From Antechinus flavipes (lineage: Eukaryota): a stretch of DNA of 64,000 bases. The stretch covers positions 264,058,001-264,122,000 of the forward strand of contig NC_067403.1 of the NCBI RefSeq assembly GCF_016432865.1, read 5' to 3'. Positions 14,431-36,517 of the stretch are shown piece by piece; the stretch's first letter is position 1; every line of letters starts with the position of its first letter. A program made the position numbers and the translations under genes. The notes beneath the pieces were generated by a model that made no database searches, was not told the DNA's origin, and saw only the letters and a list, made by a program, of their open reading frames with translations.

Positions 14431-15329
14431 TTTGTAGCTTTGGCTTTATCATATACTAGATCCCTGTGGTCCTTTATTATAATTTGTACCCAGTTTGATC
14501 CACCACCATTGTTCTGCCATTCTACTTCTTAGCCAGTCCCAGATTGTTTTAAAGGCTTACACTATTATGGGTTACAGCAGAGGTTCTAGGGGGAGCCATC
14601 CAGTCAGAAGAGATGCTGTGTATTTCTTTTCTACTTGTAACCCCAGGGCTCATCACCATGCTTTGCACAGTCGATGCTTAACAAATGCTCCATTCATTTA
14701 TGAAAAAAAATGCACAGAGGGGGAGGAAGTTCAGAAAGACGCGCAAACAAGCAGGGCAGTTTTGAAAATAATGGGCAGCATTTATTATAATTAAAAATCG
14801 GTAGCGTGAAATTTAGATTCATACTTTTCATAGAGAATCTATTTTCCGTATTCTGCTGTGTGTAGTGTTTAAGTTCAGAAAAAAAATAAGTTAATAGAGT
14901 ATTTAAGTAACCTATATTTTGATTAACTATGTGAATCAGACTTGTGGGTGTGCTGTGGTGTCCTGTAATGCACAGGTTTGGCTTCTTTGGTTTAATTGTG
15001 TCACCTCACAGCCTCATTTTTCACCCCCAGTGGGTCTCATTATGATCCCACAGAACATTGAAGAGTTTCCTATCCGCGTGGAAGCAGGTCTTCAGCCGAG
15101 GGCCTGGGGATGTGCGCAAAGCTGTCTGTCCCACATTTTTATCCATGACTTGGTAAAAGGTGTACATGACATCCCTGCCATACCTGCTGCTTTCCCAATG
15201 CTGGGAGGGAGGCCGGCAAAACTGCCCCCACGATGGCATCAGGGCCCACATTCGGCCCTCTCTTTTTCAATGATTATTCTCCTCCTGGTCCTGGGCTGGC
15301 GAGGGTTCAGGAAGGGAAAAGAGAAGTAC

Positions 15330-16640
15330 GCAGGGAGCACACTTACAGGTGGCAGGGAGCACACTTACAGGTGGCAGGGAGCACACTTACATATGGCAGG
15401 GAGCACTTACACATGGCAGGGAGCACACTTACACGTGGCAGGGAGCACACTTACATGGCAGGGAGCACACTTACACATGGCAGGGAGCACACTTACATGG
15501 CAGGGAGCACACTTACATGTGGCAAGGAGCACACTTACACATGGCAGGGAGCACACTTACACGTGGCAGGGAGCACACTTACACGTGGCAGGGAGCACAC
15601 TTACATGGCAGGGAGCACACTTACACGTGGCAAGGAGCACACTTACACATGGCAGGGAGCACACTTACATGGCAGGGAGCACACTTACACATGGCAGGGA
15701 ACACATTTACACGTGGCAGGGAGCACACTTACACATGGCAGGGAGCACACTTATACGTGGCAGGGAGCACACTTACATGGCAGGGAGCACACTTACATGG
15801 CAGGGAGCACACTTACACATGGCAGGGAACACATTTACACGTGGCAGGGAGCACACTTACACGTGGCAGGGAGCACACTTACACGTGGCAGGGAGCACAC
15901 TTACACATGGCAGGGAGCACACTTACACGTGGCAGGGAGCACACTTACATGGCAGGGAGCACACTTACATGGCAGGGAGCACACTTACACATGGCAGGGA
16001 ACACATTTACACGTGGCAGGGAGCACACTTACACGTGGCAGGGAGCACACTTACACGTGGCAGGGAGCACACTTACACGTGGCAGGGAGCACACTTACAT
16101 GGCAGGGAGCACACTTACATGGCAGGGAGCACACTTACATGTGGCAAGGAGCACACTTACACATGGCAGGGAACACTTTTACACGTGGCAGGGAGCACAC
16201 TTACATGGCAGGGAGCACACTTACACATGGCAGGGAACACATTTACACGTGGCAGGGAGCACACTTACACGTGGCAGGGAGCACACTTACACGTGGCAGG
16301 GAGCACACTTACATGGCAGGGAGCACACTTACACGTGGCAGGGAGCACACTTACACGTGGCAAGGAGCACACTTACACATGGCAGGGAGCACACTTACAT
16401 GGCAGGGAGCACACTTACATGTGGCAAGGAGCACACTTACACATGGCAGGGAACACTTTTACACGTGGCAGGGAGCACACTTACATGTGGCAAGGAGCAC
16501 ACTTACACATGGCAGGGAACACATTTACACGTGGCAGGGAGCACACTTACACGTGGCAGGGAGCACACTTACATGGCAGGGAGCACACTTACACGTGGCA
16601 GGGAGCACACTTACATGGCAGGGAGCACACTTACACGTGG
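15330..16640. repeat. Minisatellite, 22/20-bp unit GGCAGGGAGCACACTTACA(C)(G/A)T, ~60 copies
   Basis: Direct tandem array with interspersed unit variants and no spacers. Confidence 0.97.
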
Positions 16641-16959
16641 TGGGAAGCTATGCAATTAGACAGAGGGCCGGGGCTGCTGCCTCTTTTCCCTTCCGCTGCA
16701 CTTCCTGACTGCCATGGGCATGGCAGCTTGCAAGGGGCCGCGGTCCTGGGTTTGTCACGAGGCAGGTTCCCAGGAGCCAAAAGCAGTTTAGGAGGTGACT
16801 CACCCCTGGAGCAGACATGAGGTCCAGACTTCACAAGGGAGGATCCTAAGCCCTGAGACTGACGGCTAATGGTGACTCCCACTGGACGGGTGAGCTGGAA
16901 GAGAAACCTCAGTTCTTCCCTTCCCTCTCTCCTCTCTCCCTCGATTTCCTCTCTAAAAT

Positions 16960-27200: not shown

Positions 27201-30200
27201 CCCCCTCTGCCCCCCCAGCCCTGCTCGGGCCCCATGGGCACTGCCCCCTCTGCCCCCCCAGCCCTGCTTGGGCCCCATGGGCACTGCCCCCTCTGCCCCC
27301 CCAGCCCTGCTCGGGCCCCATGGGCACTGCCCCCTCTGCCCCCCCAGCCCTGCTTGGGCCCCATGGGCACTGCCCCCTTTGCCTCCCAGCCCTGCTTGGG
27401 CCCCTTGGGCACCACCTTTCCAGGTACAGTGGAGACTCCCGGTAGAAGCACTTGTTACTAGTTTCCATATGTGTGAGTCGGGTGAAGTCATTGGGGTACA
27501 CAAAGGAGAGATAGACCTGGAGGCGAGGGTCCCAAAGGTTAGAGGTCACAGGTTAGAGGCAGGACCTCCTTTAGGAATCTGGGGGCAAGGTAGAGGTCAC
27601 TTACGAACTGCAGGCCCTGGTAGCGGGCGATGGGGAAGTCCTTGACCACGTAGGTGGGGGCGTAAGCACAGGGCACCAGCACGTTCTCCAGACGGGATGG
27701 CTCCAGCCTGGGCGCTGGGGGCGGGAGGGAGGGGGAAGGGTCAGCGACCTGCCCCAGCCACTGTCCTCCGGCCCCTCCGGCCCGTCTCCCCCCCCCTCAC
27801 TGAGGAAAAAGGTGTCCCGGGCATCCGGCCTCAGCATGTCTGCCCCGAGCTCCTTGGGCTGTGGCCCCAGCTTGGCCACGTGGCTGGCCAGGGACTGGGG
27901 GATGTGGGTCACGTGATCCATCTTCAGGGATGACTCATCTGGGGGGAGAGAGGACCCCTGAAGTCACCTCCTCCCAGGGGCCGCCCTCTGCCCTCTGCCC
28001 TCGGATGGGCCCGCTGCCCCCGACTTCTCACACCTGTGTAGAGGGAGATGTGGGAGGAGCCGATGACCTCGAACTTCAGGCCGGGCAGGAACACTCGCCA
28101 CTGGGGAGGGAGGGAGGACATGTTAGAGGCCAGGGCGGAGCTTCAGGGGGGCCGGGGGCTGCCCCGCTCCGGCCCCAACCGGGGGGCTCAGGACTCACCC
28201 CCACTTCCACGTGGTCAGATCCCCGGTCATCCTGCTTGTGCAGCAGCTCAAAGTAATAGCGTCGGGAAGAGGAGAGCCTGGGAGGGAGAACCAGAGGGGC
28301 GCTGGGTGGGGAGACTGGGGAAGGGGGGGCCTGCTTCCCAATGGGGGGAGATGGGGAAGGAGACACTGGGGGGCCTGCCCCCAAGGGGGAGAGGGGGACA
28401 CTGAGGATCCTGCTTCCCAAAGGGGTGGCAGACGGGGGAGAGAGAGACTTGGGGTCCTGCCTCCCAAGGGGGAGGGGGGAGAATGAGGGTCCCGCCTCCC
28501 CAAAGGGGGTCTGGGATATATTCATTTAGGAAGAATCCCTGGGGCTTGAACCCTCAGATACAAGGGCCAGGGCTCCCCCACTGTGTCTGGGCCCAGGGGG
28601 TTTTGGCTGGGATCCCCGGGGAGCCCACCGAGCTCTCACCGCTTGGGCTTGGACACCTGGGAGCTGAACTTGGTGAATTCCCCGGGTGCTGTCCACTCGG
28701 AGCCGGTCTAGAGTGAGGAATATGAGGGGAGCGCGTGACGTGGGCCCCTTGTCACCCCATAAGTAGCCTGGAGGTGGAGGGAGACCCTGAGACAGCTCCG
28801 GGAGGGCCCCTCCCCACCAGCTCGTGGCTTGCCGTGGCCTTGACAGGAAGTCACTGGCCACTGTTTGGGACCCTCTGGCTGCAGGAGCTCCCTCCTCCCT
28901 CATAACAGGAGCCAGTGGGGGCCTGCTGGGCCCTCTTGCCCTCCCTGGCCTGGCTCCTGAGTCTGCCCTCTCCCCTGCGGGCACAAACCTCCCTCTCTGA
29001 GGGTCCTCCCTGCAGCCCCTAGCCATTAGTTCTCTGGGCTGAAGGAGCCCTTTCCTTCATGGGAGGCCTGGGGAGCCTCATTTCAGAGGGAAGACCCTGC
29101 GACTTCCCCCACGTGCTTAGCCCGCTTCTCAGCTTTTCTCCATCTGCATGGACAGCACGTGGGGGAAGTCGCAGGGTCTTCCCTCTGAAATGAGGCTCCT
29201 GCTTCCCAAAGGGGTGGCAGACGGGGGAGAGAGAGACTTGGGATCCTGCCTCCCAAGGGGGAGGGGGGAGAATGAGGGTCCCGCCTCCCCAAAGAGGGTC
29301 TGGGGTATATTCATTTAGGAAGAATCCTTGGGGCTTAGCCCTAGAATCCAGCTCTTGGGCCTTGGACCTTCCCATCCTGGCCTGGAGAAACTGGTTGTTC
29401 CCTCTCTTCCAATGCCTGGGGCTCTCCTGGGAGGGTCTCTAAGGCCCCTTGGATCCAGGTGTTGGCTGAGCACGGGGCCTGCGGGCACAGGGCCGGCCTG
29501 GGCCTCCTGGGCCCTATCTTCCTCACCCCAGCCCCCTTACTGCCCCAGGCCCAACTTCTCAGGGGTGGTCTCTGCCTTGGGGTCGGCCCCGCCCCAGCTG
29601 TCTCTGCTTCTGGCTGAGAAGCAGGCTAAGCAGAGAGCCCTGGGCCCATCGCTGGAGACCCCCAGCCCCGGCGGGGGGTCCTGGGCATACCTTGCCTACG
29701 TAGGCCACCAGCTGGGCACCTGCTGGGCTCTCATCGGGGCTCAGCCAGAACTCTGAGTTATCATCGGAGGCCACAGAGAACTGGACGTCACCTGAGGACC
29801 AGGCAGGGGCCACGCTCTAGCACCATGGCGGAGCCCCCCACGGGTGATCCCGTGGCCTCCTCCCTGCGCCCCCTCCCTGGACCTCGCCCCCATACCGTCT
29901 CTGCTGGGGTGGATGTAGCCGAAGATGCGCAGACCGTAATTCTTCCACTTAGGCGACACGGCCAGTTTCTTCACTGTCGTGCGGCTCTGGGCAGGGACGA
30001 TGGGGCAGCCCATGACCTCCTGACCCCAGGACCCTCTCTGGGCATGCGGCCCTTCTGATGTCTGGGAGCCCTGACCCTCCTTTCCCTTCACCCCCTGCCT
30101 AATGTCCCCTGGGCCTCCCAGCGTCCCCTGATCCCTCCAAGCTCCATCCACAGCCTCCCCTGATATCTCCTTGGCTCCTGGTCTCCCCCTCCAATTCTCT

Positions 30201-33200
30201 CTTCCCCTTCGACCGTGGCCCTCGGGCTCCCCCAGGTCCCCAGGCTCCCCCGTCCGCTGCCCCTCCTCTGCCCCGCCAGGGGCACACTCACATGGGGAAA
30301 CAGTGGGAAATGAAGGTTCCTCCTCAGGCTCCCCACAGTGCCTCCACACCAGTCCTCAAACACGTGCAGGTTGACCTTCCCCCTGTACTGTGTGTGCAAG
30401 AGGCCCATTGCCCTGTGACCCTGCGGTGGGAGCCTGGCTGTCACCGGCCCCCGCGAGCCCTCACTGCCCTCGGGCACTCACCTCCTCCTGCCATGGGGGG
30501 ACCTGGCGGGTGAGGTTCGGAGGGGATGGCCGTCCGCCCTGTCCAGGGAAGGTGCTCAGCTCCCGCCCGTCGGCCTGCAGGAGAGAGTGTGACTCAGGTG
30601 TGGAGAGCACAGGGGTGGGGGGGCGCGGGGTGCCCACATCGTGGGGGCCCTTACCAGCTGCTCCTCCTCACGGCTCTCGCTGGAGTCTTCCACCCTCTTG
30701 GGGGGAGACACGACCTGGGATCCTCCCGCCCCCTTCCCGGCGTCCGTGACCTCACTCAGCTTTTCTCCATCTGCATGGGCAGCACGTGGGGGAAGTTGCA
30801 GGGTCTTCCCTCTGAAATGAGGCTCCCCAGGCCTCCCATGGCCCAGCGGCCTCCCCTGGCCCAGAGGCCTCCCCTGGCCCAGAGGCCTCCCCTGGCCCAG
30901 AAGCCTCCCCTGGCCCAGAGGCCTCCCCTGGCCCAGAAGCCTCCCCTGGCCCAGAAGCCTCCCCTGGCCCAGAGGCCTCCCCTGGCCCAGAAGCCTCCCC
31001 TGGCCCAGAAGCCTCCCCTGGCCCAGAGGCCTCCCCTGGCCCAGTGGCCTCCCCTGGCCCAGTGGCCTCCCCTGGCCCAGAGGCCTCCCCTGGCCCAGAA
31101 GCCTCCCCTGGCCCAGTGGCCTCCCCTGGCCCAGTGGCCTCCCACCTAGGCCAGGGCCCACTGCCCCCAGCATGGAGCTGCCCTGTCAGGGAACAAGTTG
31201 GTGGGGAAGGAGGGGAGAGGTGCCCGCGCTATCCTGGGGGGCCTGCAAGGCATGGGCCTAGGGCTCATAGCCCAAGAAGGAAGGTTCTTGTGTCCCAGGG
31301 TTAGCTCATGTGGATGGCTAGCTAGTGTGGACGGGCCAGCAGGAGGGCCCATCTGAAAGCCGGGATGGGCTGCCGGGCCCCATTGGGCTAACTGCTCCTG
31401 GTGCCCCCCAGTGCCAAACCTGGAACCTCCAACTGGGCGCCCCCCCCACCTGCCATGAGCTGGCCGGGCTGGCCAAAGGAGCAACCTCTCAGCAAGTGAG
31501 GCTGTAGGCTGGACCCCTCTGCAGACCAGGGAAGCTGCCTCCAAGCTCCCCCAACGGGCAGCTCCAGCCTCCTCCCTGTTCTGGGCCCGCAGGACCCCAC
31601 CTCTCTCCTGCAGTGAGCTCGGAACTGAGCTTCCAGACTCCCCTCCATCTCGCACAGCGCACTGGTGCCCTCCCTGGGTCCCGCAGGCCAAAACGCACAC
31701 TCCTAATCCTGGCATTCAAAGCCCCCGCCAGTTGCCTCTCCTTCCTCCACGTGCCCCAACCCCTCTCCAGGGCCAGCGGCCAGTGCGTCCCTTCCCGGCC
31801 CGATGGGAGGGGAGGTCCACGGGGGATGGAAGGAGCTGCCCGGCTCTGGCGCTCCCACTCCGCACACCCGGGCTTGGTTTCCGGAGTCCGGAGCGGATGC
31901 TGAGGTTTCCACTTCCCCATACGGGGAGAACTCTTGCTCTAATACACCTCCTCCCTTTACCCCGGGGCTGCGACCTCCCAAGGAGCCAGGTTCCCTGCTA
32001 GAGGAAGGGGGGGTGGCTTTCCCTTTGGGGAAGGGGAAAAACCCTTAGGGGCCCCCTTGTCAGAGGCTGTCCCCTGCTTGCTGCCCCCTACTCTGGTCAC
32101 TTTCTCACCCTCTTCAGTCCATCAGCCACCAAAATTCTCTTCCTAAAGCAGAATGCTCTCCTCCAACCTTCCGTGGCTCCCTATGGCCACTGGCCCGAGG
32201 CAGCTTCACACTCCTGCACCTTAATCCTCCCCGCAGGTCTCAACTACTCACTTTCCCCAAGCCTGCCTCACAGCATGCTCCCCCGCCCCTGCCCGGGGCC
32301 TAGTGCTAACCCTAATCCTAACGGTGCAGCTCCTGTTCCAGCTTGGCTGGACTCCCTCTCCGTGTTTGATCGCATTTGCTTCCCCTGTGACATTCTGTGG
32401 GAACAGTCCTAGCCTGGAAGACCTTGGGCAGGGATCGGTACTAGTAGGGAAGTCCTGGGGGGAGATGGGAGGTGGTGGAAGGGGGGCGGGGGGAACGGGG
32501 CACGTACAGCCCCAGCCTCTGGCAGGAAATCTGAGCAGGGGGCGGTGGAGGAGGAACAGCCCTGGAATCTGAGTGGACAGGGTCTAGATCCTTCTGCGGA
32601 ATCCCTTCCCGTTCTGGGAGTCCCCCCGCCCCCGGCCCTGCCCTCACGGGACACGGAGCCTCAGTTTCCAATACACAGTCCCGAGGAGACAAGATGCCGC
32701 GGGAGGATGCTGAGTCCCAGGTGCGCTGGCACACCCCAGGTTTGGGACCCCTGACACCCAACCCAGAAGACAAACTCCAGGATGCGGGACGGAATCCGGG
32801 TCTTTAACCTGCCCCCCATCAACAGCCCTATCGGACCCAGGGGGCGCCGGCCCTAGAAGGAGGTGCCGGTGCTTTGGAGCATCTTCTGATAAAAGGGCCA
32901 GGCTCCTTTTCCCCAGAACCAAGGGACGAGCCACGAAAGCCAGGGCTGACACGTGGGCAGAGGGGAAGTGAGAGACCAAGGCTGGAACTCGGACAGGCCA
33001 GTGTCCGCGGCTGGAGAGTGGGAAGCGGGGAACCACGGGTGGTCTTGGAGCAAGGCAGGGCCAATGGCCAGGACTGTGCTTTTGCTGAGTGGAGGACGGA
33101 GGATTGAGGTTTCAGGGATTGGGAACCCCAGGGCAATTTTGTCTGGAAGACCGGTCACCTGTCTCTCTCTCCCCTCCCCGCCGTCCCCCACGGAAAAGGC

Positions 33201-33666
33201 CAAACTGAAGAGGACCCTGACTGCCCCGTTGGTCTGGTGGCCAGGCCGCTCTGCCACAGGCTCCAGTGGTCCCTTCCCTGTCCTCACACTGGCCTGCCTC
33301 TGAATAACCTTTCCCCGTTACTTGCCTAGTTCTAATGGGGTGTGAGATCCTCCCACCCAGGACCCCACTGAGGGGGTCTTTCTGGCCAGGGACCTCCAGA
33401 GGTGATACTCTCAGCGGGCCGTGACCCAGCTGTTCCCTCCCAAAGGCCCCAGGGCTCTGTGGAGGAGAAAGTGAGGCAGCCGGGGGAGCTTCCCTGGGCG
33501 GGAGCCTACCTGGGCCGGAGCCTCCGCTGAGGCGCAGCCGAAGGGCTCTGCCCTGGCGCACGAGGCTCAGGTGCAGGTAGGTGAGCCACGCGGCGCAGGT
33601 GAGCAGCACCAGCAGCAGTAGCAGGCGGAACTGCTTGCGAAGCTTCTTCACTGGGAAGCGCAGCAT
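21135..33666 (-). CDS. B4GALNT4: Beta-1,4-N-acetylgalactosaminyltransferase 4, complete 20-exon CDS (1078 aa)
   Basis: Exons (minus): 33666-33510, 30770-30655, 30574-30482, 30387-30292, 29986-29896, 29791-29691, 28707-28640, 28277-28199, 28100-28034, 27938-27801, 27714-27605, 27516-27416, 27111-27017, 26939-25979, 23126-22786, 22689-22536, 22387-22315, 22198-22045, 21856-21730, 21249-21135; all GT-AG, phases join into one frame; TM anchor, PA14-type region, FLCDLH and WGGED catalytic motifs. Confidence 0.97.
21730..21856 (-). CDS. B4GALNT4: B4GALNT4 exon 19
   Basis: [41 protein letters not shown]. Confidence 0.96.
22045..22198 (-). CDS. B4GALNT4: B4GALNT4 exon 18
   Basis: [51 protein letters not shown]. 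Confidence 0.95.
22315..22387 (-). CDS. B4GALNT4: B4GALNT4 exon 17
   Basis: [24 protein letters not shown]. Confidence 0.95.
22536..22689 (-). CDS. B4GALNT4: B4GALNT4 exon 16
   Basis: [50 protein letters not shown]. Confidence 0.95.
22786..23126 (-). CDS. B4GALNT4: B4GALNT4 exon 15
   Basis: [28 protein letters not shown]...[20 protein letters not shown]. Confidence 0.95.
25979..26939 (-). CDS. B4GALNT4: B4GALNT4 exon 14 (large Pro-rich stem exon)
   Basis: FLEEEEE...RALSWA...[11 protein letters not shown]...[34 protein letters not shown]...YMERLN. Confidence 0.93.
27017..27111 (-). CDS. B4GALNT4: B4GALNT4 exon 13
   Basis: [31 protein letters not shown]. Confidence 0.93.
27192..27412. repeat. 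43-bp minisatellite x5 in B4GALNT4 intron 12
   Basis: TGGGCACTG unit starts at 27192, 27235, 27278, 27321, 27364. Confidence 0.95.
27416..27516 (-). CDS. B4GALNT4: B4GALNT4 exon 12
   Basis: [33 protein letters not shown]. Confidence 0.95.
27605..27714 (-). CDS. B4GALNT4: B4GALNT4 exon 11
   Basis: [36 protein letters not shown]; |GTAAGT donor. Confidence 0.93.
27801..27938 (-). CDS. B4GALNT4: B4GALNT4 exon 10
   Basis: [21 protein letters not shown]...[13 protein letters not shown]. Confidence 0.93.
28034..28100 (-). CDS. B4GALNT4: B4GALNT4 exon 9
   Basis: [22 protein letters not shown]. Confidence 0.95.
28199..28277 (-). CDS. B4GALNT4: B4GALNT4 exon 8
   Basis: [26 protein letters not shown]. 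Confidence 0.95.
28305..28510. repeat. Degenerate ~40-bp G-rich tandem repeat in B4GALNT4 intron 7
   Basis: Recurring CCTGC(T/C)TCCCAA(A)GGGG core. Confidence 0.6.
28640..28707 (-). CDS. B4GALNT4: B4GALNT4 exon 7
   Basis: [22 protein letters not shown]. Confidence 0.95.
29072..29199. repeat. Perfect 46-bp inverted repeat with 36-nt loop (intron 6)
   Basis: 29072-29117 is the exact reverse complement of 29154-29199. Confidence 0.97.
29197..29336. repeat. 140-bp direct duplicate of 28408-28547
   Basis: Constant offset 789 nt, 4 mismatches by hand comparison. Confidence 0.95.
29691..29791 (-). CDS. B4GALNT4: B4GALNT4 exon 6
   Basis: [34 protein letters not shown]; phase-0 donor |GTATGC. Confidence 0.95.
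29896..29986 (-). CDS. B4GALNT4: B4GALNT4 exon 5
   Basis: [30 protein letters not shown]. Confidence 0.95.
30292..30387 (-). CDS. B4GALNT4: B4GALNT4 exon 4
   Basis: [32 protein letters not shown]. Confidence 0.95.
30482..30574 (-). CDS. B4GALNT4: B4GALNT4 exon 3
   Basis: [31 protein letters not shown]; 93 nt, |GTGAGT donor. Confidence 0.88.
30655..30770 (-). CDS. B4GALNT4: B4GALNT4 exon 2
   Basis: DGEKL...[12 protein letters not shown]; CAG| acceptor, |GTAAGG donor. Confidence 0.9.
30830..31143. repeat. 18-bp minisatellite GGCCTCCCCTGGCCCAGA x17 in B4GALNT4 intron 1
   Basis: Direct tandem array with three unit variants. Confidence 0.97.
33510..33666 (-). CDS. B4GALNT4: B4GALNT4 exon 1 (cytoplasmic tail and TM anchor)
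   Basis: [43 protein letters not shown]; donor CAG|GTAGG. Confidence 0.95.
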
Positions 33667-34027: not shown

Positions 34028-34215
34028 ACCCCCTCCTCCTCCTCCTCTTTCTCCCGCCTCTTCTTCCTCCTCCTCCCCCTCCCACCTCTTCTTCCTCCTC
34101 CTCCTTCTCCCCTTCTTTCTCTTTCCTCCGGCTCCTTCTCCCCCTCTTTCTCCTCCTCCTTGTCCCCCTCCTTTCCTCCCTTCCCCCTCCTCTTCTTCCT
34201 CCTCCTCCTCCTCCT
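34028..34215. repeat. Polypyrimidine/polypurine (CT-rich) tract
   Basis: ~190 nt almost purely C/T on plus. Confidence 0.85.
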
Positions 34216-35090
34216 CTCTGTCCGCCTTTGTTCTTCGCAGCGGCCTGGGATGGGGCTTCCCAGGCGGGCCCGGCTCCGCACCCTTAGTCCGGGGGGCCCC
34301 AGCTGCTTTCTCGCCGCGGGAGCCGCGGCGGGAGCTGGACCGAGAGCAGCTGCAGCAGCGGCAGCAGCAGCGGCGGCCGCGCTGCGATGCTACCCACCGT
34401 GAAACGGGACGCGGACCGGCCGCCGGCAACCGGCCAATCATCGGTCTCTTTCTCCGGGCTAACCAACAGACGCCCAGAGGAGGCGGAGCCTTCTGGGGTT
34501 AGGCTGCACCTAGCGTTCATCTCCACGCCAACGCGCAAACATCCACCTGGCGGACGGAACTATCAACGGCCGGGCTGAGGGGGAGGTTTGGTAGCGCGGC
34601 CTCCTATCGCTCGGACCTCGTATTCCCAGAACTCGGACCTTGCCGGCGGATGGGCTATTCCCTAAATCTGTGTGGCTGCGTCCTATGTGGTAGCGAGTCT
34701 AGGAGCCGGGCGGCTAGGAATCGAAGCGAGATCTCAGCTTACCCCCTTGCCAGGGATGGTCCCTCCCCAGCGGGACTGAGGGGCGGTGGCTGCGGGCAGG
34801 AGGCGGGAGGGATGCTGAGGATGGACCAGGGAGGAGGGAGAAGGATGGAGGATGGAGGATGCTCAGAGGTACTGGCAGGCCTTTCTAAGCTCAACCAGAC
34901 CAGGAAGCCTCTGCCCGGGGATGGACCGTTCCCGCCCAGCAAGCCCGGGATCTGCTGATCGGGATTTCCATTTATGCGCGTGTATCGGCAGGAAAATCGC
35001 GGGACGATCCCCGAGCTCCATTCAGTGCCTGTGCGGGTTTGTGAGTGAGTGCGAAGGGCTCTGCGTGGATGTGTGTGTGTGTGTGGGGGG

Positions 35091-35560
35091 GGGGGGCAGA
35101 TCTGTGCGAATCTGTGTATAGATGTGCGGGTCCGTGTTTGGGGATGCAAGTCTATGTATGGGGGTGCAGATCTATGCAAGTCTGTGTGTGGATGTACAGG
35201 TCCGTGTTTGGGGATGCAAGTCTATATATGGGGGTGCAGATCTGTGCGAGTCTGTGTGTGGATGTGGTTTGGGGTGCAGGTCTATGCGAGATTGTGTGTG
35301 GATATGCGGGTCCATGTTTGGGGGTGCAGGTCTATATATAGGGGTGCAGATCTATGCGAGTCTGTGTGTAGATGTGGTTTGGGGTGCAGATTTATGCGAG
35401 TCTGTGTGGATGTGCAGGTCCGTGTTTGGGGGTTCAGGTCTATGTATGGGGGTGTAGATCTGTACTAGTGTGTGGATGTGCGAGTCTGGGTTTGGGGTGC
35501 AGGTCTATGTGATTATGTGGATATGCGGGTAGTATTTGGGGATGCTGGTCTGTGTGAGTC
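35091..35560. repeat. Degenerate GT-rich tandem repeat built of 10-bp modules (70-, 40- and 110-bp periods)
   Basis: GGGGTGCAGA/TCTATGCGAG/TCTGTGTGTG/GATGTGCAGG/TCCGTGTTTG blocks recur in 10-bp register. Confidence 0.8.
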
Positions 35561-36472
35561 TGTGTGTGAGTGTGTGGGGCTGTATCTAAGTGTCCATCTG
35601 CAGTGGGACCTCAGAACCACCAGCAGTGGGGTGAGCCTGTTAGGTGGGACCAGAAGACTTCGAATTCACGATTCCCTGACTTAACCCTTTACAGCACCTG
35701 GCAAGAAGATGACTTGATACAATTCAGCCAACATGTCTCAGTCCTTATTGTGTACTAGGTCTGGAGTTTCTATCTGTCTCTAGCATATGTCCTGGGCACT
35801 CTGCTGAGCATGGGTATACAAAAGTGAAAGAGAAAGAGGCCCTTCCCTGGAGGAGATTCCACCTGTCCATAAGATGAGTCCATGGGTAAGCAGACACTCG
35901 GTGCTTTGGGGACAGGAGACAAGGCCAGGATGTGGCCCGCAAGTGGGACCTTGAAGGAAGAGAAGGGTTTCAACAGGTGGAGAGAGAGGTGCTCTTCCAT
36001 TGGGCCAAAGATGTCCCCAGTGAATTCAGTACTTGTTAAGCACCTATTCTGTCCCAGGCACTCTATTTGGCGCTCAGAATACAAAGAAAAATAAAGCAGT
36101 CCCTGCTGTCAGGGACAGCCAGGGAGCAAGGAAAGACTGAAGGTAAGTGAAAGAGTTGGGGGTGACAGCTGACGAGCTGCTGGAGGACCCAGGCTGGACT
36201 GGGATTACTGGGCAACCCTGAGGGCTGTGCTTGGGCCCAACCATCTCTGTGTGTCTGCGATGGGTGGAGGAGCAGGTCATAGAAAGTGGATAAGTGGAAG
36301 AGCTGAAGTTAGGATATTAGAAGGACTGTTAATATTTAGGTTGAATGTTTTACCTGACTTCACATGTGTTAATATGATGCTTGTTTTCTCTCTGGATGTG
36401 GGAGGGGCAGAAGGAGGGAGAGAATCTGGAACTCAAAATGTAGACAAAAAGACTCCAAAACAAATAAATGGA

Positions 36473-36474
<2 letters not shown>

Positions 36475-36517
<43 letters not shown>
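36475..36517. repeat. (AC)n microsatellite
   Basis: ~21 perfect units. Confidence 0.98.

What the first reader, a model, noticed from the sequence alone, without database searches (positions are those of the whole stretch)
29072..29199. A duplicated splice acceptor locked in a perfect 46-bp hairpin: self-silencing poison 3' splice site
The loop of the inverted repeat contains a copy of the exon-2 acceptor (CCATGCAG|ATGGAGAAAAGCTGAG, junction 29144/29143), while its upstream pyrimidine/branch region lies entirely in the stem. Use of the copy truncates the protein. From exon 6 (phase 0) it reads M-E-K-S-stop. From exon 1 (phase 1) it reads DGEKLRSG...TNG-stop at 29019, leaving only the TM anchor. 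The hairpin could mask this poison site, and its melting or ADAR editing could act as an NMD-coupled switch (inference).
Basis: partly seen in the sequence, partly recalled or inferred. Interest (0 to 1): 0.85.

Follow-up and report, generated by a model that had tools for sequence, protein, structure and literature searches.

The report
Template-switch hairpin carrying a decoy acceptor
A perfect 46-bp hairpin in intron 6 of the B4GALNT4 gene is really in the sequence, but it is best explained as a by-product of a patchwork insertion copied from nearby DNA in this lineage, and nothing yet shows that the splice-site copy inside it is ever used or regulated.

Summary
Arms 29072-29117 and 29154-29199 are 46/46 complementary around a 36-nt loop.

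The hairpin is one part of a 279-bp mosaic (29058-29336) made of four pieces. Each piece has a template within 1.7 kb, two are inverted, and they join at 3-9, 6 and 4 nt overlaps. That is the footprint of serial template switching. The copies differ from their templates by about 2.9%, mostly transitions, so this is real DNA of some age and not an assembly chimera. At that divergence, identical arms are expected by chance (P about 0.27).

Three other mammals have an intron 6 of only about 170-190 nt, with no second acceptor and no arms. The element is therefore lineage-specific.

The stem (-111 kcal/mol) probably keeps the decoy silent all the time. A melting or ADAR switch is unsupported. The 3' arm is also a 60-nt antisense to the real exon-2 acceptor region.

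First-stage notes, unchecked, report similar local templated insertions elsewhere in this genome.

The parts
29154..29199 (-). 5' arm of the hairpin (gene sense). It is a copy of the branch and pyrimidine region upstream of exon 2.
29118..29153 (-). 36-nt loop. It holds the decoy acceptor (AG at 29145-29144, first base after it 29143), 16 nt copied from exon 2, and about 10 nt from piece 3.
29072..29117 (-). 3' arm of the hairpin. It is an inverted copy of the same source.
29058..29336 (-). The whole mosaic insertion of 279 bp, made of four templated pieces.
   Evidence: self-blastn; mismatches and flanks
29191..29336 (-). Piece 1: direct copy of intron-7 segment 28402-28547. It has 141/146 identity; one of the five differences lies in the junction overlap.
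   Evidence: (D1)
29128..29199 (-). Piece 2: direct copy of 30755-30826 (last 56 nt of intron 1 plus the first 16 nt of exon 2), 70/72 identity.
29114..29133 (-). Piece 3: inverted copy of 29613-29632 from the same intron, 19/20 identity. E = 0.006 within the window.
   Evidence: (I3)
29058..29117 (-). Piece 4: inverted copy of 30781-30840, 59/60 identity. It runs 14 nt beyond the hairpin, so it was copied from the source and not from piece 2.
   Evidence: I1
30755..30840 (-). Template of pieces 2 and 4: the true exon-2 acceptor region, directly 3' of an 18-bp minisatellite.
28402..28547 (-). Template of piece 1, in intron 7. It overlaps an 82-bp tandem repeat.
29613..29632 (-). Template of piece 3, in intron 6.
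29691..29791 (-). Exon 6 of B4GALNT4 (PA14 region). Its donor is at 29690 and it ends in phase 0.
30655..30770 (-). Exon 2 of B4GALNT4, whose acceptor was copied.
33510..33666 (-). Exon 1 (start codon and membrane anchor). It ends in phase 1.

Best explanation
The hairpin is a real, lineage-specific structural by-product of one complex mutation. The event was a replication- or repair-associated insertion in which the growing DNA end switched template several times within about 1.7 kb, in the manner of template-switch mutation or FoSTeS/MMBIR.

It pasted four pieces into intron 6 of B4GALNT4:
1. a direct copy of an intron-7 segment;
2. a direct copy of the exon-2 acceptor region;
3. a short inverted copy from intron 6 itself;
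4. an inverted copy of the exon-2 acceptor region.

Because the same template was copied once in each orientation, the transcript carries a perfect 46-bp stem. The copied AG sits in the loop and its branch and pyrimidine region sits in the stem.

In the pre-mRNA the local hairpin should close within about 130 nt of transcription. It should then keep the decoy acceptor permanently unavailable to U2AF and U2, so the insertion is tolerated and drifts as neutral intron DNA.

Shown here: the anatomy, the templates, the junction overlaps, the divergence, and the absence from other mammals. Inferred: the molecular mechanism of the insertion, that the stem forms in vivo, and that the decoy is silent.
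For: - Every part of 29058-29336 has a nearby template: 146, 72, 20 and 60 nt at 96.6, 97.2, 95 and 98.3% identity. Two pieces are inverted. Junction overlaps are 9 nt (3 nt exact), 6 nt and 4 nt.
- Piece 4 matches the source 14 nt beyond the end of the 5' arm, so both arms were copied from the source locus.
- There are 8 substitutions between copies and templates (about 2.9%), 8 of 8 transitions once the junction position is set aside. Three are CpG in the copy against CpA in the template (one site is counted in both arms). This is the pattern of evolutionary decay, not of assembly or read error.
- At that divergence 1.3 differences are expected between the 46-nt arms, and P(0) = 0.27.
- Three other mammals (L001 from NCBI GCA_002738545.1; L002 and L003 from Logan contigs) have an intron 6 of about 170-190 nt against 983 nt here. 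They have an exon-2 acceptor but no second copy and no arms.
- Run X1 holds 0.78 of the sampled 31-mers of 28900-29450. That is more than the 0.56 possible if none of the 227 insertion-specific words were present.
- The gene is otherwise intact: exons 1-6 are open, and there are 15 tblastn segments covering 832 aa at 61.5% identity to a named fish B4GALNT4.
- Template switching is documented to create perfect hairpin stems in a single event, with enrichment in introns (PMC10710096; PMC8794818 and PMC5453318).
- Both templates lie next to or inside tandem repeats. That fits fork stalling (inference).
Against: - No close relative could be obtained, so the ancestral empty site is not shown. The three outgroups are too distant for their intron 6 to be aligned base by base.
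- No reads were laid. The hairpin is therefore not independently confirmed in a second individual: X1 may be the assembly's own sample, and X2 at 0.55 does not exceed the bound. Splice-junction use is untested.
- The decoy keeps an essentially intact acceptor, with only a C-to-T change at -9.
- Both arms kept a CpG that the source lost. With n = 1 site this is no evidence of constraint, but it does not exclude it.
- The 3' arm pairs more strongly with the real exon-2 acceptor region (-140.8 kcal/mol) than with the 5' arm (-107.7 kcal/mol), so an effect on exon 2 cannot be ruled out.
Confidence: 0.72

Rival explanations
1. The hairpin is a selected device that masks a poison 3' splice site. Regulated opening, by temperature, helicases or ADAR editing, would divert transcripts to a truncated, NMD-targeted form and so tune B4GALNT4 output.
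For: - The acceptor copy is intact and its branch and pyrimidine region is in the stem.
- Using it gives a stop after 4 codons from exon 6, or a product of about 93 aa from exon 1.
- Structural masking of splice signals is known (PMC11802352).
Against: - The element is lineage-specific and absent from three other mammals.
- Its origin is fully explained by mutation.
- Stem perfection is expected by chance.
- A stem of -111 kcal/mol is too stable for melting, and scattered I-U pairs would not open 46 bp (inference).
- No good donor lies downstream to define a poison exon, the best being 6 of 9.
- There are no RNA data.
Confidence: 0.05
2. The 3' arm acts at long range as a 60-nt antisense to the real exon-2 branch and pyrimidine region. 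This would lower exon-2 inclusion, or set up a two-state competition between the real and the decoy acceptor.
For: - There is 59/60 complementarity between 29058-29117 and 30781-30840.
- The duplex energy is -140.8 kcal/mol against -107.7 for arm-to-arm pairing.
- A 14-nt single-stranded toehold lies outside the local hairpin.
Against: - The 5' arm is 36 nt away, whereas the real acceptor is 1.66 kb upstream and may already be spliced or packaged, so local folding should win kinetically (inference).
- The gene looks intact and presumably functional.
- There are no RNA data.
Confidence: 0.08
3. Assembly artefact: a chimeric or fold-back read, or a mis-join, created the inverted duplication, and the animal's DNA lacks it.
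For: - A perfect palindrome-like repeat is a classic product of fold-back reads.
- First-stage notes list many local inverted 'templated insertions' in this genome (unchecked).
- There is no independent read confirmation.
Against: - The copies differ from their templates by 8 transition substitutions, including CpG decay. An artefact would copy exactly.
- The 3' arm extends 14 nt beyond the 5' arm, so the structure is not a simple fold-back.
- The junction overlaps of 3-9 nt are far too short for assembler joins.
- X1 holds insertion-specific 31-mers.
Confidence: 0.06
4. The hairpin is a new small-RNA or editing substrate with a function of its own: an intronic pri-miRNA or endo-siRNA source, or an ADAR target.
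For: - It is a long, perfect intronic stem in a transcribed gene.
- Template-switch hairpins have given rise to new miRNA genes, mostly in introns (PMC10710096).
- Generic miRNA-hairpin models match weakly.
Against: - All Rfam matches are far below gathering scores: best 58 bits against 200, and 46 against 60.
- The stem, at 46 bp or more, is longer than the roughly 35-bp preference for Drosha stated in PMC10710096.
- There are no small-RNA data and no conservation.
Confidence: 0.05

Closest known systems
Template-switch mutations that create perfect hairpins in one event (Loytynoja & Goldman 2017, PMC5453318; Monttinen & Loytynoja 2022, PMC8794818; Monttinen et al. 2023, PMC10710096)
   Same: A nearby sequence is copied in reverse complement during replication, which gives a perfect stem at once. 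The result is lineage-specific and intronic, and needs no selection to explain the perfect pairing.
   Different: - The events described there are mostly short (15 to about 80 nt) and use the immediately adjacent sequence.
- Here four pieces totalling 279 bp come from templates up to 1.7 kb away.
- Both arms are copies of a third locus.
- The copied template happens to be a functional 3' splice site.
FoSTeS/MMBIR complex rearrangements with serial microhomology-mediated template switches
   Same: Several templated segments, in direct and inverted orientation, are joined at 3-6 nt microhomologies. The templates lie close together, near repeats that can stall forks.
   Different: The scale is hundreds of bases, not kilobases to megabases. 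There is no copy-number change of whole exons. The mechanism is inferred from the footprint only.
Splice signals masked by local RNA structure (MAPT exon 10 and SMN2 exon 7 5' splice-site stems; the F8 intron 15 structure that sequesters the pyrimidine tract; review PMC11802352)
   Same: A splice signal lies inside a stable helix that should block factor binding.
   Different: - The known cases involve real, used splice sites with marginally stable structures that set isoform ratios, and they are conserved.
- This case is a decoy site in a very stable 46-bp perfect stem, young and unconserved.
- There is no evidence it is ever used.
Poison exons and unproductive splicing coupled to NMD (e.g. 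in SR protein genes; general knowledge)
   Same: Using the site would bring in an early stop codon.
   Different: Known poison exons are highly conserved, have both splice sites, and are seen in RNA. Here there is no conservation, the possible donors are weak, and no RNA evidence exists.
Intronic inverted repeats such as paired Alu elements (ADAR editing, back-splicing, exonisation; general knowledge)
   Same: Intronic double-stranded RNA formed by two copies of one sequence in opposite orientation. It is a likely ADAR substrate.
   Different: The arms are not transposon-derived. They are 46 bp, not about 300 bp. They are copies of the host gene's own splice acceptor.

Membership tests
Template-switch / MMBIR-type templated insertion | Each inserted segment has an identifiable template nearby | tested here: met
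   Four pieces have templates at 28402-28547, 30755-30826, 29613-29632 and 30781-30840.
Template-switch / MMBIR-type templated insertion | At least one segment is in inverted orientation relative to its template | tested here: met
   Pieces 3 and 4 are reverse complements of their templates.
Template-switch / MMBIR-type templated insertion | Short microhomology at the junctions between segments | tested here: met
   The overlaps are 29191-29199 (9 nt with one mismatch, 3 nt exact), 29128-29133 (6 nt) and 29114-29117 (4 nt).
Template-switch / MMBIR-type templated insertion | An ancestral or outgroup state lacking the insertion | tested here: inconclusive
   Three other mammals lack any second acceptor copy or arm and have a 170-190-nt intron 6. 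They are too distant to show the exact empty site, and no close relative could be fetched.
Regulated poison splice site / NMD switch | The splice junction is observed in RNA | not testable with these tools
Regulated poison splice site / NMD switch | Conservation of the element across species | tested here: not met
   The element is absent from L001, L002 and L003.
Regulated poison splice site / NMD switch | A premature stop codon results from using the site | tested here: met
   Exon 6 joined to 29143 gives MEKS-stop. Exon 1 joined to 29143 gives a stop at 29021-29019.
Regulated poison splice site / NMD switch | A competent downstream donor to define the exon | tested here: inconclusive
   The best GT sites match 6 of 9 consensus positions, against 6-8 of 9 for the six real donors. 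This is a simple consensus count, not a trained model.
Structure-masked splice signal | The signal lies inside a stable predicted helix | tested here: met
   Positions -10 to -55 of the decoy form the 5' arm. The hairpin folds to -110.8 kcal/mol, and the region has z = -14.4.
Structure-masked splice signal | Opening the helix activates the site | not testable with these tools
   This needs a minigene with disruptive and compensatory mutations.
microRNA precursor (Rfam families) | The match reaches the family's gathering score | tested here: not met
   Best scores are 58 bits against 200 (MIR839), 46.1 against 60 (mir-1684) and 41.1 against 63 (mir-1305).
B4GALNT4 (host gene identity) | Sequence similarity over the whole protein to named B4GALNT4 proteins | tested here: met
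   The window aligns over 832 aa at 61.5% identity to P0019. NCBI names P0019 N-acetyl-beta-glucosaminyl-glycoprotein 4-beta-N-acetylgalactosaminyltransferase 1, with PF05679 and PF02709; relatives also carry PA14, PF07691. Single exons alone gave no Pfam hit.

The most novel reading that the evidence does not exclude
The insertion made a two-state RNA device. The 3' arm can pair with the decoy's branch and pyrimidine region (local hairpin: decoy silent, real exon-2 acceptor free). Alternatively, through its 14-nt toehold, it can pair with the real exon-2 acceptor region (real acceptor masked, decoy released). The balance would decide between productive B4GALNT4 mRNA and truncated or NMD-targeted forms. 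This would be a regulatory switch born in a single mutational event.
Probability: 0.04. Interest if true: 0.75.

Novelty: new member of a known kind. Interest (0 to 1): 0.3.

Why it matters
This is a clean, fully dissectable example of one complex template-switch event. The event can at once (a) build a perfect long RNA hairpin inside a gene, (b) plant an intact copy of a working splice acceptor in a downstream intron, and (c) neutralise that copy in the same stroke, because the second, inverted copy pairs with it.

That bears on two questions: how new intronic hairpins (raw material for miRNAs and ADAR targets) arise, and why potentially harmful decoy splice sites can be tolerated.

It does not change what is known about B4GALNT4 or about splicing control unless RNA data show that the decoy, or the antisense arm, has an effect.

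Tried and rejected
- **Reads.** So there is no read-level test of the hairpin, of its presence in relatives (organisms B-E) or of junction use.
- Three local steps are disclosed:
  - One local script still used the unmasked window as a blast target.
  - From then on, the places were masked with N in my scripts.
  - The repeat finder was run by reference on the whole window.
  - One search printed the orthologous exon of other species, not the window's letters.
- **Exact look-up of window ORFs.** Looking up the 118-aa ORF over the insertion and the 341-aa exon in public assemblies found nothing on record.
- **Homologue search with the 118-aa ORF.** No hit.
- **Search for close relatives through the 341-aa exon.** The best hits were only about 50% identical. 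The query with the sturgeon protein listed only fish. The contigs fetched are from distant mammals, and two had no DNA available.
- **Metagenome scan for the loop sequence.** No match.
- **Pfam on single exons.** No hit, because the pieces are too short.
- **Rfam.** Only sub-threshold generic hairpin matches.
- **Transposon or MITE origin.** Rejected. The arms are copies of the gene's own exon-2 acceptor region, and no further copies exist in the window.
- **Simple fold-back duplication.** Rejected, because the 3' arm extends 14 nt beyond the 5' arm.
Full report
**What is there**

The finding lies on the minus strand, inside a gene that reads right to left in window coordinates.
- The inverted repeat is exactly as described. 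Arms 29072-29117 and 29154-29199 are 46 nt and 100% complementary, with 36 nt between them.
- It is the only perfect long inverted repeat in the 64-kb window.
- Folded as sense RNA, the region reaches -124.3 kcal/mol against -60.4 +/- 4.4 for dinucleotide shuffles (z = -14.4). The 128-nt hairpin alone gives -110.8 kcal/mol.
- The 24-mer across the acceptor occurs exactly twice in the window, at 29128-29151 and at 30755-30778. None is expected by chance.

**Host gene and reading frames**

Splicing the obvious exons gives an open 218-aa N-terminus. It consists of a membrane anchor, a linker and the start of a PA14-type region.
- Exon 1 is 33666-33510 (ends in phase 1).
- Exon 2 is 30770-30655.
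- Exon 6 is 29791-29691 (ends in phase 0).
- Exon 7 starts at 28707 (read), so intron 6 is 983 nt.

The window aligns over 832 aa at 61.5% identity to protein P0019. NCBI names P0019 N-acetyl-beta-glucosaminyl-glycoprotein 4-beta-N-acetylgalactosaminyltransferase 1, that is B4GALNT4.

Exon 6 joined to 29143 reads MEKS-stop. Exon 1 joined to 29143 reads DGEKLRSG...TNG-stop.

**The hairpin is one part of a larger mosaic**

Self-comparison shows that 29058-29336 is built entirely from copies of nearby DNA. In gene sense:

| Piece | Position | Template | Orientation | Identity |
|---|---|---|---|---|
| 1 | 29336->29191 | 28547->28402 (intron 7) | direct | 96.6% |
| 2 | 29199->29128 | 30826->30755 (last 56 nt of intron 1 plus 16 nt of exon 2) | direct | 97.2% |
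| 3 | 29133->29114 | 29613-29632 (intron 6 itself) | inverted | 95%, E = 0.006 |
| 4 | 29117->29058 | 30781-30840 | inverted | 98.3% |

- The pieces overlap by 9 nt (3 nt exact), 6 nt and 4 nt.
- The two arms are pieces 2 and 4, the same template copied once in each orientation.
- Piece 4 matches the source for 14 nt beyond the end of the 5' arm. It was therefore copied from the source locus and not from piece 2, and the structure is not a simple fold-back.
- A 6-nt motif (AGGGCT) stands just before the insertion and again 6 nt after it. This may mark the landing site. I could not test that.
- Both main templates lie in or beside tandem repeats: an 18-bp minisatellite at 30829-31143 and an 82-bp repeat at 28330-28509.

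**Real or artefact, and how old**

- The copies differ from their templates at 8 positions. All are transitions once the position inside the first junction is set aside.
- In three comparisons the copy has CpG where the template has CpA. This is the signature of evolutionary decay. An assembly or read chimera would be an exact copy.
- The same G (copy) against A (source) difference is seen in both arms. That fits a later CpG loss in the source.
- Divergence is about 2.9%. With general mammalian neutral rates of roughly 1-2 x 10^-9 per site per year (my knowledge), that puts the event a few to about 15 million years ago. The error is wide because it rests on 8 substitutions.
- At this divergence 1.3 differences are expected between the 46-nt arms, and P(0) = 0.27. 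The perfection of the stem therefore needs no selection.
- Run X1 holds 0.78 of the sampled 31-mers of 28900-29450. Without any of the 227 insertion-specific words the share could not exceed 0.56. X1 may be the assembly's own sample.
- X2, at 0.55, is uninformative on this bound.

**Other species**

No close relative could be reached. Three more distant mammals were fetched: L001 (NCBI GCA_002738545.1), L002 and L003 (Logan contigs).
- Their exons align at 80-92% identity.
- Their intron 6 is only about 170-190 nt and their intron 7 about 200 nt.
- Approximate searches for the 24-mer, the 46-nt arm and the start of piece 1 found nothing in any of the three loci. L002 and L003 contain exon 2 with its acceptor, and no second copy of it was found.
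- The element is therefore not an old, conserved part of B4GALNT4 regulation. It arose in an intron that has grown about fivefold in this lineage.

**How it most likely works**

Origin (inferred from the footprint): one replication- or repair-linked event with serial template switches at microhomologies. Such events are documented to create perfect stems at once and to be frequent in introns (PMC5453318 and PMC8794818; PMC10710096).

Consequence (inferred):
- The two arms are transcribed within 128 nt of each other, so the local hairpin should close first.
- It would hold positions -10 to -55 of the decoy acceptor in a 46-bp, 61% GC helix.
- Splice signals buried in helices are poorly recognised (PMC11802352).
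- The decoy also lacks a good partner donor. The best GT sites downstream match 6 of 9 consensus positions, against 6-8 for the real donors (a crude count).
- I therefore expect the decoy to be constitutively silent and the insertion to be neutral or nearly so.
- 'Self-silencing' is a fair description of the geometry. It is better read as the reason the insertion was tolerated than as a device.
- A switch by melting is not credible for a stem of about -111 kcal/mol. Scattered inosines would not open it (inference).

**A complication**

The 3' arm with its 14-nt extension is also a 59/60 antisense to the branch and pyrimidine region of the real exon-2 acceptor.
- As a duplex, that pairing is stronger (-140.8 kcal/mol) than arm to arm (-107.7 kcal/mol).
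- Kinetics and distance (1.66 kb, and intron 1 possibly already removed) favour the local hairpin.
- Even so, an effect on exon 2 cannot be excluded without RNA data.
- This is the subject of a separate first-stage note (s1-192119).

**What could not be done**

- The three protein-database searches and the representative search did not reach a close relative.
- The metagenome scan was blank.
- Rfam gave only sub-threshold matches to generic miRNA hairpin models.

**Verdict**

- The best reading is a real, lineage-specific, multi-template-switch insertion whose hairpin is a by-product. It is a new member of a known kind.
- First-stage notes (unchecked) list several other local inverted templated insertions in this genome. 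If they are real, this is a common mutational mode here and not a special device.

Noticed in passing
window 29058-29117 versus 30781-30840: The 3' arm plus a 14-nt extension is a 59/60 antisense to the real exon-2 branch and pyrimidine region. The predicted duplex is -140.8 kcal/mol, stronger than the local arm-to-arm pairing (-107.7 kcal/mol). An ungapped extension to 86 nt keeps 86% complementarity (I1).
   Followed up: partly
window 30829-31143: An 18-bp minisatellite of 17.5 copies at 95% match lies directly upstream of the exon-2 acceptor. It is G-rich on the sense strand. It abuts the template of both hairpin arms and may have stalled replication.
   Followed up: no
window 28330-28509: An 82-bp tandem repeat of 2.2 copies lies in intron 7 and overlaps the template of piece 1.
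   Followed up: no
window 28708-29690 versus L001:779-928, L002, L003: Intron 6 is 983 nt here but about 170-190 nt in three other mammals. Intron 7 is also longer (about 355 nt against about 200). The extra DNA beyond the 279-bp mosaic is unexplained.
   Followed up: partly
window 29337-29342 and 29046-29051: The hexamer AGGGCT stands immediately 5' of the insertion (gene sense) and again 6 nt after its 3' end. It may be a duplicated landing site or the microhomology used for the return switch.
   Followed up: no
window 14919-16820: A long tandem repeat is open in several plus-strand frames. The translations repeat a motif like HTYTWQGAHLHVAGSTLT. It looks like a large minisatellite downstream of the gene.
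   Followed up: no
window 34032-34228 and 35042-36517: CCT-rich low-complexity arrays lie just upstream of exon 1, and a long CA/TG microsatellite region lies beyond them.
   Followed up: no
same genome, other windows: First-stage notes report several other perfect or near-perfect local inverted templated insertions of 76-548 bp in this genome. All are unchecked. It is worth testing whether this is a lineage trait or an assembly-method artefact.
   Followed up: no
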